Notes: a model not told the origin generated them from the sequence alone. A DNA stretch of 64,000 nt from Octopus sinensis (GCF_006345805.1 NC_043016.1:29574001-29638000); one strand, 5' to 3'. Positions 279 through 26,028 are shown, counted from the first letter of the stretch. A program made the numbers and translations.

Positions 279-2537
279 ATGGTGTTTTATGTGCCACCGA
301 CACAAGTGCCAGATGAGGCTGGCGAACGGCCACGATCGGATGGTGTTTGTTACGTGCCCACAACACGGAGGCCAGTCGATGCGGTACTGGCTACGGCCAC
401 GTTCGGATGGTTTTCTTGTGTGCCACGGCACTGGTACCACAAAGATACAAATTCCATTGATGTTCATCTATTTTGATTGGTTTGATTTTCACTTGCCTCA
501 ACAGGTCTTCACAAGTGTCACATACTTGCCTCAACAGGTCTTCACAAGTGTCATAAGAAGGAAGGTATGCACAGGTAGACTGACTACGTCCCAGGTAGGG
601 GCCACGGGTTATGGCCTGACTAGTCCTTGCGGGTCTTTGGATGGTGTTTTTATGTGCCACCAACACAGGTGCCAGATGAGGCTGGCGAACGGCCACAATC
701 GGATGGTGTTTGTTACGTGCCCACAGCACGATGTGGTACTGGCTACCGCCACGTTCGGATGGTTTTCTTGTGTGCCACCGGCATTGGTACCACAAAGATA
801 CAAATTCCATTGATGTTCATCTATTTTGATTTGTTTTGATTGGATTTGATTATGATTATGATTATGATTATTATTATTATTATTATTATCACTTGCCTCA
901 ACAGTCTTCACAAGTGTCATTTGATTTGATTAGATAGCACTTGCCTCAACAGGTCTTCACAAGTGTCATTTGATTTGATTAGCACTTGCCTCAACAGGTC
1001 TTCACAAGTGTCATAAGAAGGAAGGTATGCACAGGTGGACTGACTATGTCCCAGGAAGGGGCCACGGGCTATGGCCTGACTAGTCTTGCCGGGTCTTCGG
1101 ACAGGTGCCAGATGAGGCTGGCGAACGGCCACGATCGGATGGCGTTTGTTATGTGCCCACAGCACGGAGGCCAGTCGATGCGGTACTGGCTACAGCCACG
1201 TTCGAATGGTTTTCTTGTGTGCCACCGGCACTGGTACCACAGAGATACAGATTCCATTGATGTTCATTTGTTTTGATTTTTTGATTTGTTGATTTGTTGA
1301 TTTTCACTTGCCTCAACAGGTCTTCACAAGTGTCACAAGAAGGAAGGTATGCACAGGTGGACTCCCAGGTAGGGGCCACCACGATCGGATGGTGTTTGTT
1401 ATGTGCCCACATCACAGAGGCCAGTCGATGCGGTACTGGCTACGGCCACGTTCGGATGGTTTTCTTGTGTGCCACCGGTACTGGTACCACAAAGATACAA
1501 ATTCCATTGATGTTCATCTATTTTGATTTGGTTTGATTTGATTTTCACTTGCCTCAACAGGTCTTCACAAGTGTCACACACTTGCCTCTGCCTCAACAGG
1601 TCTTCACAAGTGTCACACACTTGCCTCTGCCTCAACAGGTCTTCACAAGTGTCACAAACTTGCCTCAACAAGTGTCACACACTTGCCTCAACAGGTCTTC
1701 ACAAGTGTCATAAGAAGGAAGGTATGCACAGGTGGACTGACTACGTCGCCGGGTCTTCGGATGGTGTTTTTATGTGCCACCGACACAGGTGCCAGATGAG
1801 GCTGGCGAACGGCCACGATCAGATGGTGTTTGTTGTGCCCACAGCACGGAGGCCAGTCGATGCGGTACTGGCTACGGCCACGTTCGGATGGTTTTCTTGT
1901 GTGCCACCGGTACTGGAACCACAAAGATACAAATTCCATTGATGTCATCTATTTTGATTTGGTTTTTTTTTCACTTGCCTCAACAGGTCTTCACAAGTGT
2001 CACACGTGTCACACACTTGCCTCAACAGGTCTCCACAAGTGTCACACACTTGCCTCTGCCTCAACAGGTCTTCACAAGTGTCACACACTTGCCTCTGCCT
2101 CAACAGGTCTTCACAAGTGTCACACACTTGCCTCAACAGGTCTTCACAAGTGTCATAAGAGGGAAGGTATGCACAGGTGGACTGACTACGTCGCCGGGTC
2201 TTCAGATGGTGTTTTTATGTGCCACCGACACAGGTGCCAGATGAGGCTGGCGAACGGCCACGATCGGATGGTGTTTGTTGTGCCCACAGCACGGAGGCCA
2301 GTCGATGCGGTACTGGCTACGGCCACGTTCGGGTGGTTTTCTTGTGTGCCACCGGCACTGGTACCACAAAGAATACAATTCCATTGATGTTCATCTATTT
2401 TGATTTGTTTTGATTTGATTTTCACTTGCCTCAACAGGTCTTCATAAGTGTCACAAGAAGGAAGGTATGCACAGGTGGACTGACTACGTCCCAGGTAGGG
2501 GCCACGGGTTATGGCCTGACTAGTCTTGCTGGGTCTT
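279..2537 (-). repeat. Tandem array of six ~280-460 bp copies of the RTE ORF-end/3' UTR segment
   Basis: Recurrent junctions (GGGTCTT or GGCCAC joined to GGATGGTGTTT or nearby sequence) near 638, 1100, 1380, 1757 and 2202; about 17 copies of the sub-repeat CACTTGCCTCAACAGGTCTTCACAAGTGTCA. Confidence 0.9.
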
Positions 2538-5500
2538 CTCACGCACAGCATACTTCCATAGGTCTCGGTCTCTAGACATTTCCTTAGTGAGACCTAAAGT
2601 TCGAAGGTCGTGCTTCACCACCTTGTCCCAGGTTTTCCTGGGTCTACCTCTTCCACAGGTTCCCTCAACTGCTAGGGTGTAGCACTTTTGCACACAACTA
2701 TCTTCAGCCTTTCTCGTCACATGACCATACCAGCGCAGCTGTCTCTCTTGCACACCACAACTGACGCTTCTTAGGATCAACTTTTCTCTCAAGGAACTTA
2801 CACTCTGACGATTATGAACACTGACATTACACATCCATCGGAGCATACTGGCTTCATTTCTTGTGAGCTTACGCATATCCTCAGCAGTCACGGCCCATGT
2901 TTCACTACCATGTAGCATGGCTGTACGTACACATGCATCATACAGTCTGCCTTTTACTCTGAGCGAGAGGCCTTTTGTCACCAGCAGGGGTAAGAGCTCT
3001 CTAAACTTTGCCCAGGCTATTCTTACTCTAGCAGTTACACTTTCAGCACACCCACCCCCGCTACTGACTTGGTCTCCTAGGTAGCGGAAGCTATCAACTA
3101 CTTCTAGTTTGTCTCCCTGGAACGTGGCAGAAGTTGGTCTCTGCACATTTCCAGTGTTTATTGCTCCTGAGCATTTGCCACAGACAAAAACTATTTTCCT
3201 AGTTAGCCTTCCTTTGACATTGCTGCACCTCTTATGTGTCCATAGCTTACACTTGGTGCATCTTATAGAGTTTCTACCTACACCTTTTTTACAGATCGAG
3301 CAGGGCCATCTACCTGAAGGCGTTTGTGATTGATCTACCTTCCTACTTATTAGGACTTTGGTTTTGGCTAGGTTGATTCTAAGCCCTTCGATTCTAATCC
3401 TTGTTTCCACACCTGAAACTTCTCCTCCAGTTCTGATAGTGACTCAGCAATTAGAGCAAGGTCATCAGCATAGAGGAGCTCCCAGGGGCACCTGTCTTGA
3501 ATTCCTCCGTTATTGCCTGGAGGACTATGATAAATAGGAGGGGACTGAGGACTGAACCTTGGTGGACCCCAACCTCTACCCGGAATTCTTCACTGTACTC
3601 GTTGCTAACCCTCACCTTACTAGCAGCGTCTCTGTACATGGCTTGCACAGCTCTCACCAACCATTCATCTATCCCTAGTTTCCTCATTGACCACAGATAA
3701 GGGATCGGGGGACCCTGTCAAAGGCTTTCTCCAAGTCAACAAAAGCCAGGTACAAGGGCTTATCTTTGGCTAGGTATTTCTCCTGCAGCTGTCTTACCAG
3801 GAATATAGCATCAGTAGTACTTTTCCCTGGCACGAACCCAAACTGCATATCATCTAAGCTAAACTCTCTCTCTAATTAGTTGGGCTATGACCCTCTCCGT
3901 AACCTTCATTACCTGATCCAGCAGCTTGATGCCCCTGTAGTTATTGTCTCTAGGGCGTCGCCTTTACCTTTGTAGCAGTTGACTATTATGCTGCTACACC
4001 AGTCATTGGGTATGCCCTCGTGTATCACCTGGTTAACTATACGGGTGACTAAGCTATAGCCGACACCACCAGATATTTTGAGCATCTCTGCAGTAATTCC
4101 TGATGGGCCTGGGGCTTTCCCTGTTTTCATGCTTCTAATTGCCTTATCTACTAAGGAACTGTTAACTCGGATTGCTGGTCCCTCTGTTGGGTCGACATTC
4201 GGCAGCAGACTCTCTTTATCCATTCATTTTCTTCATTCAGCAACCTATCATAGTGGCGTCTCCAAGCCTCTCTCTTTGCATCCTCATTAAGCGCAAGTGA
4301 ACCGTCATCCTTGCGAACACATTTCTCTCCTACCACGTCACGATTCTCTCTCACACACTGTCTTGCAACACGAAATACCTCAAGTCTTTCATCCTCACGA
4401 CGCAGGACATTGGCAAATTTTTCCTTATCTGCCTCCCCTCTGGCTAGATAGACCTGTCTCCTGGCTTCCCTTCTGGCAGACTGATACACTTCCCTGCTAC
4501 CACCGTTCTTCCAGGCCTTCCAAGCCTGTTTCTTTTGTCTAATAGCCCTGTCAACAATATTGTTCCACCACCACGTTATTTTGGGTCTTAAGGGGACTTT
4601 GCACCAGCCACAGATCTGGTCAGCGGCTTTCAGCAGGTTGTCCCTCAGAAGCGTCCAGTTGTCTTCTACCCCATGCGTAGCTATACTCCCTTCCATTTCG
4701 TCTAAGGCTTCAATAACATATCTCTAAATCTCTGTCCATTCGCAGGGTCTTTAAGCTTCCAGACCCTTTTTCCATGTTGGTCGTCTTCTAGTCGCCCTCT
4801 TAGTCCTGATCCTAAGTCACTAACTACCAGTCTATGTTGTGGGGGCATTCTTCACCTGGGAAGGTTTTGGCATTTATAAGCAGCCATCTTTCCCTTTTTC
4901 TGGCAAGGATGTAGTCGATTTGGCTAGTATGCCGGCCCGATCGGTAGGTGACCAGGTGGCTTGTCGGTTCCTGAAGTTAGTGTTGCAAATCATAAGACTA
5001 TTCACATCACAGAACTCCAGCAGCCTGGTTCCCTCCTCGTTGCGGGAACCATAACCGTAGCCTCCATGCACGCCATGGAAGCCCCCAGCACATCGTCCAA
5101 CATGCCCATTGAAGTCACCAGCCACAAAGAGAAGGTCCCTGTCGTTCGTCAATGATGGTCTGCAGTAGGGTGTCATAGAAACAGTCTTTCTGTCCATCAG
5201 GTAGCCCTGGCTGAGAGGCATAGGCCGATATAATAGTTGCTAAACTATGATGGAGCACTAATCTAATCTTAATTATTCTGTCACTTACTCTGACTACCTC
5301 GATTACCTTATCTACCCATTTTTCGGCGATAAGCATGCACCACCCCCGACTCCGTCAGTATTCCCAGCCCAGAAAATCTTGTACCTCTGTCCTTTGCCTT
5401 GTGAGAACCTAGCAGAACCTCCTCTCCACCTCACTTTGAATGCAGCATATATCAACCCACCTCCGTTCAAGCAATATCAACTATCTCGCCAGATCTGCCT

Positions 5501-6889: not shown

Positions 6890-7260
6890 GTAGGAGGAAC
6901 TCTTGAGAGTCAACGGCCATCCAATAAATGTCTAAAGGCTGTATCATGCAAGGGGACATAGAAATAATCGGACTGAATACCTGATTGCGCGGGTTAAACC
7001 ATTGGGAGTGAAGGACTCCTAGCCTTTGTTAGGGCATCCTTCTAGGAGAAGGTAACTCAGGTTACTGGGATAATTCCGACATAAAACCTGCGGCTCAGTG
7101 GTTACCGATGATGTTGACTTGTTCTTCTTTTCGTATTATGGCTGCTGTTGCTTAGTGAGTGGGATTGACTCAGTGCACAACCTTTCCTCACTTTAAAAAA
7201 ATCTTGCACAGGCATTGCATGATAACAACATTGATTAAGCTTCATGCAATGGCCATACTC
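6890..7260 (+). mobile_element. Possible LINE (RTE-type) 5' UTR fragment
   Basis: Contains GGGCATCCTTCTAGGAGAAGGTAACTC, resembling the CTAGGAGAAGG.AAACTC motif recalled from RTE/BovB 5' regions; single copy here, unverified. Confidence 0.3.
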
Positions 7261-7284
7261 GATAACGAGGGGCAGCCACCCATG

Positions 7285-7315
<31 letters not shown>

Positions 7316-7389
7316 ATACGTGTTGCATGTTTTGGATCCTTAACATATGTTCCGTCTTGAGCCATGCCAGGCTCATGAGTTCTGGTTTC

Positions 7390-7489
7390 NNNNNNNNNNN
7401 NNNNNNNNNNNNNNNNNNNNNNNNNNNNNNNNNNNNNNNNNNNNNNNNNNNNNNNNNNNNNNNNNNNNNNNNNNNNNNNNNNNNNNNNN
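7390..7489. other. Assembly gap (100 N)
   Basis: Run of exactly 100 N, the usual placeholder for a gap of unknown size. Confidence 1.
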
Positions 7490-8485
7490 AATATTATGAA
7501 TTAAATGGCTCTTTATTTTATCATTACAACGTAGAAGACAACTTCTTGTTGCAGTTGTACACAGGTTATTTGCTATTCTGTTATCTATTCTGTTGCAAGA
7601 AGACTGGAGGAGAAATGAAGGAAAGAGAGAGAGGGTGGAAGAGAGGGAAAGAGAGGGAGAGAGAGAGATTGGGTGGAAGAGAGACGAGTAGAGAGGGTAA
7701 GAGTTGTGTAGTCCCTTGTATAAGGTGCTTACTCCGTCGGTGCAGAAAGAAAGGAACAAACAGAATTTGGTTACCCTATTTATATATGTTGGAAAGCTGG
7801 ATGTAGGCCAGAGAACAAGGGAAAGTAATTGGTTTATCTCTGCCGATCTGTATTTAGCCCAAGGATGTTAACTAGACCTTAAGTGTGACAGTTGACTCTC
7901 ATAGTTTTCTAAGTGCGTAAGTTGAAATCAATGGGAAACACGCCATGACCCAATGGAATCTACTTGGAAAAATCATAGGTAAATTCCAATTGAAGAAATT
8001 CTATGTTGTAGAATTGTATTAAAAAGAAACATAGGAACAGGCAGAGAAAATCTGCCTTTTATCATAAGAGATAAAACTTACTCGGAAAAGGATGCGTGGA
8101 CTTTCGATCATATAATAATATAAATAATATATAAATATATGCATATGTACATACCTACATATATATGTATATATACATGCATATATGGGTAGAGGACATA
8201 AAAAAAAAACCTGAACAGAATGAGAAACGAGAACATAAAAAATAAAAACATAGAAAACGAACTTTTTTTTTCGAGTAACGAAAAAACAAACAGAGAAACG
8301 AGACATGCAACATAAAGAACATTCCCTTCATCAGTTGTCCCCTGTTTTATCTACTCCGCATTCCGAAAGTTAGGGCAAGACGCGACTTCGTTAAAACTCA
8401 CACACATGTAGTATGTATGTATGTATGTATGTATGCATGTAATATAAAAATATATAATCATAATGAAGGATACTTGGATTATATA

Positions 8486-24524: not shown

Positions 24525-25151
24525 AATTAGCAAGCTGGGCAAAATGCTTAGCAGCATTTCATCCATCCTTATGTTCTGAGTCCAAATTCTGCCAAGATTA
24601 ACTTTGCCTTTCATCCTTTTGCAGTTGAGGAAATAAGTACCAGTCATGCACTGAGGTCAATGTAATCGACTTATCTCTGCGCCAAAATTTCAGGCCTTGT
24701 CCTTATAATAGAAAGGATTATTACTATTATTATTATTATTATCATTATTATTATTTTTAAGGTGGCAAGCTGGCAGAATCATTAGCGTGCCGGGTGAAAT
24801 GCTTAGCGGTATTTCATCTGCTGTTACGTTCCGAGTTCAAATTCCGTCGAGGTCGACTTTACCTTTCATCCTTTCGGTGTCGATAAATTAAGTACCAGTT
24901 GTATATTTGGGTCGATCTATTCGACTGGCACTCCCCCTACAAATTTCAGGCTTTGTGCCTACAGTAGAAAGAATTATTATTATTATTATTTGTATCAAGG
25001 ATTATTATCATTCAGTAAAGTACTGAGGTCAATGTAGTAGACTGCACCCCTCTCCACAGTCCCTCTCTCCCCCATTCTCTCTCTCCCCCATTCCCCTCTC
25101 CCCATTACCCCCTTCGAAAAAATTTCAGGCCTTGTACCTAAAGCAGAAAGA

Positions 25152-25211
<60 letters not shown>

Positions 25212-25251
25212 CATCATCATCATCATTATTATTATTTTTTTATTATTATTA

Positions 25252-25300
<49 letters not shown>

Positions 25301-25358
25301 CAGCATTATTATTATTTTATTATTATTATATTATTATTTTATTATTATTTTATTATTA

Positions 25359-25397
<39 letters not shown>

Positions 25398-25550
25398 CGC
25401 CGAAGTCGACTTTGCCTTTCATTTTTTCGGGGTTCGATAAATTAAATACCAGTGAAATACTGAGGTCGATAAAATCTTCTAGCCACCCCCCTCCCTCCCT
25501 CAAAATTTCAGGCCTTGTGCCTATTGTAGAAAGGATTATTATTATTATTA
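24525..25550 (+). mobile_element. Tandem SINE-B cluster with (TAT)n tails directly upstream of SPAST
   Basis: Four units (about 24525-24755, 24760-24990, 25015-25395, 25396-25550), each ending TTTCAGGC(C/T)TTG..CCTA..GTAGAAAG.ATTATTATT or a close variant; a further partial copy near 24415-24500. Confidence 0.85.
25160..25395. repeat. Expanded (TAT)n SINE tail
   Basis: Directly visible. Confidence 0.95.
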
Positions 25551-25605
25551 AAAGTTTTTTTCAGTTTCTTGAAGCGACCGTGCTCGAGTTGTCTCCCTTC
25601 AAAGA

Positions 25606-25749
25606 ATGGCGGACACCATAAAATGCAACGCCGTGGTAGTGGAAGGATTTTTGGCCGGAAAAGACACGAGAATCATTCAAAGAATCAGCCTAAAAGTGAA
25701 CGTTCATTCCATAGACAGAATGTACGACTGTTTGCAACACCAATATTAA
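25606..25749 (+). CDS. Out-of-frame upstream ORF overlapping the SPAST start (47 aa, [14 protein letters not shown]...LQHQY)
   Basis: ATG at 25606 in a strong context (agaATGG), 17 nt before the SPAST ATG, stop TAA at 25747-25749. Translation is unproven. Confidence 0.45.
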
Positions 25750-26028
25750 TTCTATTCGCCATAATACGGTCCGTTGCTGCCCAGTTATGGCTCGTTTTAG
25801 TCGTGCTTGTGTGCAAAAGTCGTAAATCCATTTCGTACAAATGTGAGAAAGCTTCAAAGAAAAAATGTTTAGATGAAGAAAAGGCTTTCATGATGTCGTA
25901 TTCTGAATCAGGGAAGATAAGAACTACTCTGGGGCCTGGTGAACCTTCATTGTCGAAGCAGAAACACCACCATAGAAAAGCTTTTGAATATATTTCCAAA
26001 GCTTTGAAAATTGATGAAGAAGATGCAG
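25623..26028 (+). CDS. SPAST: Spastin, coding exon 1 (N-terminal hydrophobic hairpin and first MIT helix)
   Basis: [31 protein letters not shown] matches spastin HKRNLYYFSYPL...LLR.VAFHLGLLF, and [21 protein letters not shown] matches the MIT start (Drosophila [18 protein letters not shown]). Donor CAG|GTATGT is phase 1, as for human exon 1. Confidence 0.93.

What the first reader, a model, noticed from the sequence alone, without database searches (positions are those of the whole stretch)
25606..25895. Octopus SPAST appears to reproduce the human uORF / M1 / M87 translational switch
Seen: a strong-context out-of-frame ATG 17 nt upstream of M1 opens a 47-codon ORF overlapping M1; the next in-frame methionines are M90/M91 (25890, 25893), just after the hydrophobic hairpin (about aa 36-64) and before the MIT domain. 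Established: human SPAST makes membrane-anchored M1 and soluble M87 isoforms, with an overlapping uORF and weak Kozak context limiting M1. Inference: the same control is deeply conserved or convergent in a large-brained invertebrate. Caveat: several other out-of-frame ATGs (25715, 25787, 25841, 25864, 25872) lie before M90.
Basis: partly seen in the sequence, partly recalled or inferred. Interest (0 to 1): 0.72.

Follow-up and report, generated by a model that had tools for sequence, protein, structure and literature searches.

The report
Conserved upstream start codon in octopus spastin
The first exon of the octopus spastin gene has the same layout as the human gene: a decoy start codon just before the real one, a membrane anchor, then a second in-frame start. 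This layout turns out to be shared by molluscs, other invertebrates and fish, so it is an old feature of the gene rather than an octopus speciality, and whether octopus really makes two protein forms is still untested.

Summary
Window 25606 is an out-of-frame ATG in strong context (caaagaATGg), 17 nt before M1 (25623). It opens a 47-codon ORF ending at 25749. The next in-frame Mets are M90/M91 (25890/25893), after the hydrophobic hairpin and before the MIT helix.

The exon-1 peptide is 100% identical to the start of the annotated Octopus sinensis and O. vulgaris spastin.

The upstream ATG sits in a block, AAAGAATGGCGGAC, that is identical in cuttlefish. Its core ATGGCGG recurs 13-20 nt before M1, always out of frame, in a second decapodiform, a chiton, a limpet, bivalve-like loci and other unnamed protostome loci; an oyster-like locus has ATGGCTG. 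A fish has the human-type GTTATGG / TGAATGA pair. Cuttlefish and the other decapodiform's mRNA contigs include the upstream ATG.

An internal Met lies 17-28 residues before HHRKAF in 52 of 54 non-redundant invertebrate spastins.

Points against a simple copy of the human switch:
- Octopus M1 has A at -3, so it is not weak.
- Out-of-frame ATGs before M90 are not depleted (5 seen, 4.9 expected).
- The conserved core resembles a YY1/TISU promoter element.
- No octopus transcript or protein data were reachable.

Verdict: the architecture is real, conserved and ancestral; the two-isoform switch in octopus is plausible but unproven.

The parts
25601..25614 (+). Conserved block AAAGAATGGCGGAC containing the upstream ATG. 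Core ATGGCGG is YY1/TISU-like.
   Evidence: 14/14 identical to Acanthosepion pharaonis genomic DNA and cuttlefish mRNA contigs. The core is identical in the second decapodiform's mRNA contigs, chiton and Patella, and also in L024-L026, L035 and L044. ATGGC is invariant in a 10-locus alignment.
25606..25749 (+). Upstream ORF: 47 codons, frame +1, overlapping M1, stop TAA at 25747-25749.
   Evidence: The same start offset (-17) and stop position (+126) occur in cuttlefish; the other decapodiform has 53 codons.
25623..26028 (+). SPAST exon 1 coding part (M1 to splice donor; 135 codons plus 1 nt).
   Evidence: The peptide is 100% identical to the N-terminus of O. sinensis XP_029648681.2 and O. vulgaris CAI9734503.1. 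The donor is GCAG|GTATGT. The cuttlefish mRNA splices at the homologous point.
25728..25814 (+). Hydrophobic hairpin (aa 36-64) with central Arg49.
   Evidence: Read directly from the sequence. Pro40 and Arg49 are invariant in alignment A2.
25720..25893 (+). Five out-of-frame ATGs (25720, 25787, 25841, 25865, 25873) opening ORFs of 9, 12, 1, 3 and 6 codons. All end at or before 25893.
   Evidence: The count equals the synonymous-permutation expectation, and the early stops occur in 100% of permutations.
25890..25895 (+). In-frame Met90 (gctttcATGa, weak context) and Met91 (ttcatgATGt, A at -3). Candidate start of a hairpin-less isoform.
   Evidence: They lie 26 and 25 residues before HHRKAF, inside the 17-28-residue zone that holds a Met in 52 of 54 non-redundant invertebrate spastins. 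Fish M72 is at distance 25.
25968..26021 (+). Start of the MIT-type helix ([18 protein letters not shown], aa 116-133).
   Evidence: Nearly invariant across all homologues. Pfam MIT at 119-178 in P0218, below the curated cut-off.
25434..25550 (+). Last of four SINE-like repeat copies with (ATT)n tails. It ends about 55 nt before the upstream ATG and limits the unique proximal promoter.
   Evidence: families D2, D4 and D5.

Best explanation
This is the 5' end of the octopus spastin gene, and it carries an ancient control layout.

An out-of-frame AUG in strong context, embedded in a conserved ATGGCGG core, lies 17 nt before the main start M1 and opens a uORF that overlaps M1. Where that AUG is present in the mRNA, most scanning ribosomes should start there. 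They would then pass M1 while translating the uORF, which limits synthesis of the hairpin-containing, membrane-bound spastin.

Ribosomes finishing the uORF at 25749 are then 141 nt before Met90/Met91. A hairpin-less, soluble spastin would be made from Met90/91, either by reinitiation or from transcripts that begin inside exon 1. Simple leaky scanning is not a likely route.

Shown here: the sequence layout, its conservation across molluscs and other animals, and the presence of the uAUG in decapodiform cephalopod mRNAs. Inferred: that octopus mRNAs contain the uAUG, that it lowers M1 output, and that Met90/91 is used.
For: Layout.

The uAUG block is identical in cuttlefish at the same 17-nt spacing. 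It is present in 3 of 4 cuttlefish mRNA contigs (5'UTRs of 627, 417 and 82 nt) and in 9 of 9 full-length mRNA contigs of the second decapodiform.

A strong-context, out-of-frame uAUG overlapping M1 is also found in:
- chiton (-13), Patella (-19) and an oyster-like locus (-13);
- venerid-like bivalve loci (-20) and L026 (-20);
- a teleost, with the human-type contexts GTTATGG and TGAATGA (PMC2474578).
L035 and L034 carry the same overlapping uAUG at -14, with G at +4 but a pyrimidine at -3.

None of the roughly 12 offsets seen is a multiple of 3.

The internal Met is concentrated 17-28 residues before HHRKAF in 52 of 54 non-redundant sequences, inside an otherwise variable linker. It has a purine at -3 in 11 of the 13 loci listed. 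RefSeq and other models in beetles, Mactra and Lottia start exactly at it.

The vertebrate precedent is experimental: human M1/M87 (PMC2474578) and zebrafish M1/M61 (PMC6141775).
Against: - No octopus transcript, TSS, ribosome-profiling or protein data could be reached. The look-up of the window's own exon-1 ORF found nothing, and no octopus RNA-derived proteins appeared.
- Octopus M1 has A at -3, so it is not a weak start as in vertebrates.
- Five out-of-frame ATGs, one in strong context, lie between M1 and M90 and show no depletion. Delivery of ribosomes to M90/91 from the full-length mRNA would therefore be inefficient.
- M90 itself has T at -3.
- Conservation extends beyond ATGG to ATGGCGG(A/C), which a pure uORF start does not need.
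- One cuttlefish contig begins just after the uAUG.
- A group of loci with the N-terminus MGRIVGRKR shows no uAUG within 60 nt and has a strong M1. A 5'UTR intron there could hide a uAUG.
Confidence: 0.55

Rival explanations
1. The conserved ATGGCGG(A/C) block is mainly a DNA element, a YY1-type (TISU-like) core promoter motif close to the transcription start. On this reading its ATG is conserved because the factor needs it. Effects on translation would be incidental, and the ratio of long to short spastin, if both exist, would be set by where transcription starts relative to the element or by an internal promoter.
For: - The core matches positions 5-11 of TISU SAASATGGCGGC (PMC3177215). Those positions are needed for YY1 binding, and TSSs lie on both sides of the element in PSMD8 and WBP11 (PMC2518114).
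- Conservation covers ATGGCGG, not only ATGG.
- CCAAT boxes lie about 95-100 nt before the motif in chiton, Patella and the oyster-like locus. This would put the TSS only tens of nt upstream; that step is inference.
- One cuttlefish contig starts at GGCGGAC.
- In Lepidoptera and orthopteroid insects the same signature (xNGG / xDGG peptides) sits inside or next to annotated coding sequence.
Against: - The four bases before the ATG fit TISU poorly in cephalopods (aaga against SAAS).
- The fish and human uAUG (GTTATGGAG) keeps the strong context but lacks the GCCAT core. What is shared across phyla is therefore the uAUG, not the YY1 site.
- The offset to M1 varies from 11 to 47 nt yet is never in frame. 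This suggests that ribosomes see the uAUG.
- The second decapodiform's mRNA contigs extend 10-71 nt, and cuttlefish contigs 65-610 nt, upstream of the motif. That is mostly longer than typical TISU leaders.
- YY1 binding was not testable here.
Confidence: 0.3
2. The internal Met is conserved for a protein-level reason, as part of a short linear motif before GPGEP. Octopus then makes only full-length spastin, and the uORF merely tunes overall spastin level.
For: - The Met is often flanked by acidic residues and followed about 10 residues later by the conserved GPG(E/D)P motif.
- No invertebrate short isoform is reported in the searched literature.
- Drosophila work treats spastin as a single 758-aa protein (PMC4395272).
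Against: - Apart from the Met, the linker varies in length and sequence.
- The Met sits at the same distance from the MIT helix as the experimentally used fish and human second start (PMC6141775).
- Gene models starting exactly at it exist in several invertebrates.
Confidence: 0.1
3. Chance: the upstream ATG and the M90/M91 pair are neutral features of an AT-rich exon.
For: Upstream ATGs are common in animal 5' leaders. The other ATGs in the exon occur at the expected rate.
Against: Identical block and spacing in three cephalopod lineages, the ATGGCGG core in at least eight further protostome loci, and the internal Met in 52 of 54 non-redundant sequences.
Confidence: 0.03

Closest known systems
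Vertebrate SPAST (SPG4) dual-start architecture: overlapping uORF, M1 and M87 (human), M1/M61 (zebrafish)
   Same: - An out-of-frame uAUG with purine at -3 and G at +4, a few nt before M1, overlapping it.
- The uORF ends between the two starts.
- M1 precedes a hydrophobic hairpin with a central Arg.
- The second in-frame Met lies after the hairpin and about 25-32 residues before the MIT helix.
(PMC2474578, PMC6141775.)
   Different: - Octopus M1 has A at -3 (adequate), against TGAaugA (weak).
- Five out-of-frame ATGs lie between the starts in octopus, against none in the GC-rich fish exon.
- The octopus uAUG is in an ATGGCGG core, against ATGGAGG in fish.
- A cryptic exon-1 promoter and two proteins are shown in human. 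Two proteins from the two start codons are shown in zebrafish. Neither is shown in octopus.
[quoted passage not shown]
   Same: Core ATGGCGG is identical. It has one orientation and sits next to the start of the gene. It has G at +4 and A at -3. Such elements act in both transcription and translation (PMC2518114, PMC3177215).
   Different: - Here the element's AUG does not open the main ORF; it opens an out-of-frame uORF.
- The upstream SAAS positions fit poorly in cephalopods.
- The last position is A, not C.
- Distance from the TSS is unknown in octopus and mostly more than 30 nt in decapodiform mRNA contigs.
Overlapping-uORF control with reinitiation (general eukaryotic scanning rules, Kozak 2002 as cited in PMC2474578)
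   Same: An upstream AUG in strong context diverts ribosomes from the next AUG. Termination downstream of the main AUG allows reinitiation only further 3'.
   Different: A 47-codon uORF is long for efficient reinitiation, and several mini-ORFs intervene before M90/91.

Membership tests
SPAST (spastin) gene, exon 1 | N-terminal hairpin, then MIT helix [18 protein letters not shown], then an AAA ATPase in the full protein | tested here: met
   The exon-1 peptide is 100% identical to the start of annotated O. sinensis and O. vulgaris spastin. Pfam finds AAA, AAA_lid_3 and Vps4_C, with MIT sub-threshold, in O. bimaculoides P0218. Only exon 1 lies in the window.
Vertebrate-type SPAST uORF/M1/M87 architecture | Out-of-frame uAUG in good context overlapping M1 | tested here: met
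   25606 caaagaATGg, frame +1, 47 codons, stop 126 nt into the main ORF.
Vertebrate-type SPAST uORF/M1/M87 architecture | M1 in a poor Kozak context (TGAaugA) | tested here: not met
   Octopus has cataaaATGc, with A at -3. A is at -3 in all six mollusc lineages examined. The fish has aggtgaATGa as in human.
Vertebrate-type SPAST uORF/M1/M87 architecture | Second in-frame AUG after the hairpin and before MIT, at a homologous position | tested here: met
   M90/M91 lie 26 and 25 residues before HHRKAF, and fish M72 lies 25 before it. By my own count on a sequence recalled from memory, human M87 is about 32 before the equivalent position. 52 of 54 non-redundant invertebrate sequences have a Met in the 17-28 zone.
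Vertebrate-type SPAST uORF/M1/M87 architecture | Second AUG in a better context than M1 (G at +4 in human) | tested here: inconclusive
   M90 is gctttcATGa (weak). M91 is ttcatgATGt (A at -3, T at +4), no better than M1. The second decapodiform (tttaacATGg) and the fish (gagtcATGg) are strong.
Vertebrate-type SPAST uORF/M1/M87 architecture | The path from M1 to the second AUG is free of other AUGs, so leaky scanning is possible | tested here: not met
   Five out-of-frame ATGs in octopus, against 4.9 expected. Pooled over 9 lineages, 26 against 22.6 expected.
Vertebrate-type SPAST uORF/M1/M87 architecture | The uAUG is contained in the mRNA (TSS upstream of it) | not testable with these tools
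   No octopus transcript was reachable. The feature is met in relatives: 3 of 4 cuttlefish mRNA contigs and 9 of 9 full-length contigs of the second decapodiform.
Vertebrate-type SPAST uORF/M1/M87 architecture | Two protein isoforms are actually produced; an internal promoter lies in exon 1 | not testable with these tools
   This needs western blotting, N-terminomics, ribosome profiling or CAGE. The 469-aa Logan proteins starting at the internal Met are only 5'-truncated contigs with variable ends.
TISU / YY1 core element | Sequence SAASATGGCGGC, with positions 5-12 essential | tested here: inconclusive
   Octopus has aagaATGGCGGA: positions 5-11 match 7/7, position 12 is A, and positions 1-4 match 1/4. 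Chiton aaacATGGCGGA and L024 agaaATGGCGGC fit better (PMC3177215).
TISU / YY1 core element | Located between the TSS and +30; bound by YY1 | not testable with these tools
   There is no TSS map or binding data. A CCAAT box about 95-100 nt upstream in three molluscs is only indirect. Octopus has SINE copies there instead.

The most novel reading that the evidence does not exclude
The spastin 5' module is ancestral to bilaterians. It consists of an out-of-frame AUG inside a YY1/TISU-like ATGGCGG element a few nt before M1, the hairpin, and a fixed post-hairpin Met. On this reading one 8-nt element acts at both levels. Transcripts starting upstream of it carry the decoy AUG and yield mostly soluble spastin. 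Transcripts starting just downstream of it yield membrane-bound M1. Start-site choice around the element would then set the isoform ratio. It would follow that Drosophila and other invertebrate models make an overlooked short spastin.
Probability: 0.3. Interest if true: 0.7.

Novelty: new member of a known kind. Interest (0 to 1): 0.5.

Why it matters
Human disease work on SPAST (hereditary spastic paraplegia) turns on the balance between scarce, membrane-bound, potentially toxic M1 and abundant soluble M87. Why cells hold M1 down remains unexplained (PMC2474578).

The decoy AUG and the second start are both kept across molluscs, other protostome lineages and fish. That argues the restriction of M1 is an old and selected property of the gene, not a vertebrate quirk. 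It also predicts that invertebrate models may already express two isoforms.

The ATGGCGG core adds a testable link between start-site choice in transcription and start-codon choice in translation.

For octopus biology itself the finding is ordinary. It says nothing specific about large brains.

Tried and rejected
1. Octopus transcripts.
   - Looking up the window's own exon-1 ORF found nothing.
   - The octopus proteins in the database are genome annotations only.
   - The O. bimaculoides gene is too long (137 kb) for its DNA to be returned.
   - The octopus TSS therefore stays unknown.

2. Short transcripts as evidence of an internal promoter. The 469-aa proteins that start exactly at the internal Met of the second decapodiform come from contigs with scattered 5' ends. 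These are assembly truncations, not a TSS.

3. Selection for leaky scanning. Synonymous-codon permutation shows no depletion of out-of-frame ATGs between M1 and the internal Met, in octopus or pooled over 9 lineages.

4. 'All mini-ORFs stop before M91' as a designed reinitiation track. This also happens in 100% of permutations, so it is uninformative.

5. CpG content as a TSS marker. Enrichment over exon 1 is only modest (o/e 1.0-1.24 against 0.50) and not decisive.

6. Look-ups for Pecten and Owenia genomic DNA failed.

7. Literature. No paper in the library covers spastin in octopus or a second start in invertebrates.

8. The cuttlefish annotated 'SPAST' protein P0035 looked like support for translation of the uORF. 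It is a chimeric gene model that joins the uORF frame to the post-hairpin region.

Full report
**What is in the window**

- ATG 25606 (caaagaATGgc; A at -3, G at +4) is in frame +1 relative to M1. It opens 47 codons and ends at TAA 25747-25749.
- M1 is at 25623 (cataaaATGca).
- The main frame runs 135 codons plus one base to a canonical donor, GCAG|GTATGT, so exon 1 ends at 26028.
- The next in-frame Mets are codons 90 and 91 (25890, 25893).
- Between M1 and M90 there are five out-of-frame ATGs, at 25720, 25787, 25841, 25865 and 25873. They open ORFs of 9, 12, 1, 3 and 6 codons.
- Only exon 1 of the gene is in the window. The O. bimaculoides gene spans 137 kb.

**Identity**

The 136-aa exon-1 peptide is 100% identical to the N-terminus of spastin annotated in Octopus sinensis (XP_029648681.2) and O. 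vulgaris (CAI9734503.1). It differs by one residue from O. bimaculoides. Pfam on the O. bimaculoides protein gives MIT (119-178, below cut-off), AAA, AAA_lid_3 and Vps4_C. The gene call and the M1 assignment are therefore sound. The N-terminal peptide M-x-R-[RK]-G...GRKR is itself conserved across molluscs and other phyla, so M1 is a real start.

**Conservation of the upstream ATG in cephalopods**

- In genomic DNA of the cuttlefish Acanthosepion pharaonis (L001), the block AAAGAATGGCGGAC is identical. The ATG is again 17 nt before M1, and the uORF again has 47 codons and stops at +126. The bases on either side of the block differ.
- Four RNA-derived Logan contigs encode the full 620-aa cuttlefish spastin. 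Their 5' leaders of 627, 417, 82 and 15 nt are colinear with the genome. Three contain the uAUG; the fourth begins at GGCGGAC.
- Nine full-length mRNA contigs of a second decapodiform lineage (species not identified) all contain aagagaATGGCGGAC at -17, with 10-71 nt of leader before the motif.
- So in decapodiforms the uAUG is in the mRNA.
- For octopus no transcript could be reached.
- The octopus uAUG would be excluded only if transcription started within the 16 nt between it and M1, or further 3'. Upstream of about 25,550 the sequence is four SINE-like copies with (ATT)n tails.

**Conservation beyond cephalopods**

An out-of-frame uAUG overlapping M1 is present in the loci below. Context is strong (purine at -3, G at +4) except where noted.

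| Locus | Sequence | Offset from M1 |
|---|---|---|
| Chiton Liolophura | caaaacATGGCGGAt | -13 |
| Limpet Patella vulgata | catataATGGCGGAa | -19 |
| Oyster-like contig | taaactATGGCTGCt | -13 |
| Two venerid-like bivalve contigs | agaaATGGCGGCt | -20 |
| L026 | gtaATGGCGGAt | -20 |
| L035 (T at -3) | tcaATGGCGGAa | -14 |
| L034, arthropod-like (C at -3) | caaATGGCGACa | -14 |
| L044 (uORF does not overlap M1) | gtgATGGCGGAc | -47 |

- A 10-locus alignment has ATGGC invariant and the next GG nearly so.
- Gene models that happen to read through the leader in frame carry the peptide signatures of the same DNA. These are x-W-R in caenogastropods, heterobranch-like sequences and the annelid Owenia, and x-[ND]-G-G in Schistocerca, Gryllus and Bacillus. 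They occur in 11 of 15 informative cases.
- Every offset seen (11, 13, 14, 17, 19, 20, 22, 25, 47) is not a multiple of three.
- A group of closely related metagenome loci with the N-terminus MGRIVGRKR has no uAUG within 60 nt and a strong M1. A 'cag' just before M1 there may mark a 5'UTR intron, so this absence is inconclusive.
- The teleost Paramormyrops has cgtGTTATGGagg at -25 (40 codons, stop +97) and aggTGAATGAat at M1. These are exactly the contexts reported for human, GTTaugG and TGAaugA (PMC2474578).

**The internal Met**

- Among 54 exon-1 peptides made non-redundant at about 70% similarity, 52 have a Met 17-28 residues before the HHRKAF motif, with the mode at 20-24.
- Elsewhere in the 60-residue linker Met is almost absent: 10 Mets in about 2,600 positions, against 55 in about 650 inside the zone.
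- Octopus M90/M91 are at 26 and 25, and the fish second start is at 25.
- The linker around the Met varies in length and sequence.
- The base at -3 is a purine at the aligned internal Met in 11 of the 13 loci listed. The exceptions are octopus M90 and cuttlefish M93; octopus M91 has A.
- Several gene models start exactly at this Met: Euwallacea X4, Sitophilus X3, Mactra and Lottia.
- In vertebrates this Met is an experimentally used start (human M87, PMC2474578; zebrafish M61, PMC6141775).

**What does not fit a plain copy of the human switch**

1. M1 has A at -3 in all molluscs examined, so it is not weak.
2. Synonymous-codon permutation shows that out-of-frame ATGs between M1 and the internal Met are at expectation. 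Octopus has 5 against 4.9. Nine lineages pooled have 26 against 22.6, with P(null<=obs) = 0.95. All the mini-ORFs stop before M91, but this happens in every permutation. Leaky scanning to M90/91 is therefore unlikely. Reinitiation after the uORF, whose stop is 141 nt before M90, or a shorter transcript would be required. Neither could be tested. Contigs that seemed to encode only the short form are assembly truncations.
3. Conservation extends past ATGG to ATGGCGG(A/C). This matches positions 5-11 of the TISU/YY1 element SAASATGGCGGC (PMC3177215). In that element these positions are needed for both YY1 binding and cap-proximal initiation, and TSSs occur on both sides of it (PMC2518114). In chiton, limpet and the oyster-like locus a CCAAT box lies about 95-100 nt upstream of the motif. 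That would place the TSS only tens of nt before the uAUG; this step is inference.

**Weighing**

Any AUG with A at -3 and G at +4 that lies in the mRNA 17 nt before, and out of frame with, the main start must divert ribosomes. This follows from the established scanning rules cited in PMC2474578. Three observations argue that ribosomes see the uAUG and that its decoy role is the common denominator:
- it is in relatives' mRNAs;
- its offset changes between lineages yet is never in frame;
- vertebrates keep the strong uAUG without the GCCAT core.

The extended motif argues for an added transcriptional or cap-proximal role in protostomes.

I put 0.55 on the translational-control reading, with the route to M90/91 left open. 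I put 0.30 on a mainly promoter-element reading and 0.10 on a protein-level role for the internal Met with only one isoform. The remaining 0.03 goes to chance.

**Comparison and novelty**

The layout is a member of the known SPAST uORF/M1/second-start architecture. Differences are a non-weak M1, intervening AUGs and a TISU-like uAUG.

[quoted passage not shown] I found no paper in the searchable library that extends this to invertebrates or mentions octopus.

The finding is therefore a new member of a known kind. The wider pattern, protostome-wide with an ATGGCGG core, is the more interesting by-product. It is not specific to octopus or to large brains.

Noticed in passing
window 24526-25550: Four copies of a roughly 250-nt SINE-like element, each ending in AAATTTCAGGCCTTGT..TAGAAAGGATTATTATT, plus a roughly 250-nt (ATT)n microsatellite. 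They fill the kilobase directly upstream of SPAST exon 1, and the last copy ends about 55 nt before the upstream ATG. The CCAAT box seen at the equivalent place in chiton, limpet and the oyster-like locus is absent.
   Followed up: partly
L001 5001-11435 (Acanthosepion pharaonis, protein P0035): The deposited cuttlefish 'SPAST' protein model is chimeric. It starts 28 codons upstream in the uORF frame, reads the uORF (MADDIQCNVAAVEG...), then jumps to the post-hairpin region, skipping M1 and the hairpin. RNA-derived contigs give the normal 620-aa protein.
   Followed up: yes
P0098 (O. sinensis XP_029648681.2) against P0218 (O. bimaculoides): The O. sinensis model (545 aa) leaves the AAA domain after ...LIEFDG and ends in unrelated sequence. 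The O. vulgaris models (545 and 558 aa) lack the variable exon block after the MIT domain. The O. bimaculoides model has 630 aa. The annotated octopus isoforms differ mostly through model errors or exon skipping.
   Followed up: no
L029-L043 (JGI metagenome contigs; N-terminus MGRIVGRKR): A cluster of related invertebrate spastin exon-1 loci has no upstream ATG within 60 nt, M1 in a strong context (agagATGGgt), and a much longer Ser/Thr/Gly-rich linker. They still carry a Met before a PGPGSP motif. A 'cag' just before M1 suggests a 5'UTR intron.
   Followed up: partly
P0139-P0162 and P0149/P0151/P0161 (Lepidoptera; orthopteroid insects): In Lepidoptera the residue equivalent to M1 is Leu (…SNGGRLSRK…) and the annotated start lies 10 codons upstream (MVSGDDSNGGR). 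The ATGGCGG signature (N-G-G) would then sit inside the coding sequence. In Schistocerca, isoform X1 starts upstream of the signature (MSFSDGGRMQRK) and X2 starts at M1.
   Followed up: no
window 2520-3410 and 4151-4696, minus strand: Two long non-repetitive ORFs (296 and 181 aa). The first has a weak PHD/C1-type zinc-finger match, below the Pfam cut-off. They may be remains of a retroelement.
   Followed up: partly
window about 7400-7500: A run of N (translated as X in ORF 7159-7806), that is, an assembly gap. Much of 5.4-6.2 kb, 15.6-20.9 kb, 27.4-28.0 kb and 53.8-60.7 kb is simple or low-complexity repeat.
   Followed up: no
L011 1-23: One Logan mRNA contig of the second decapodiform begins with Illumina adapter sequence (…GTGTGCTCTTCCGATCT) directly joined to the 5'UTR at -66 from M1. 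This is an assembly artefact, not a TSS.
   Followed up: no
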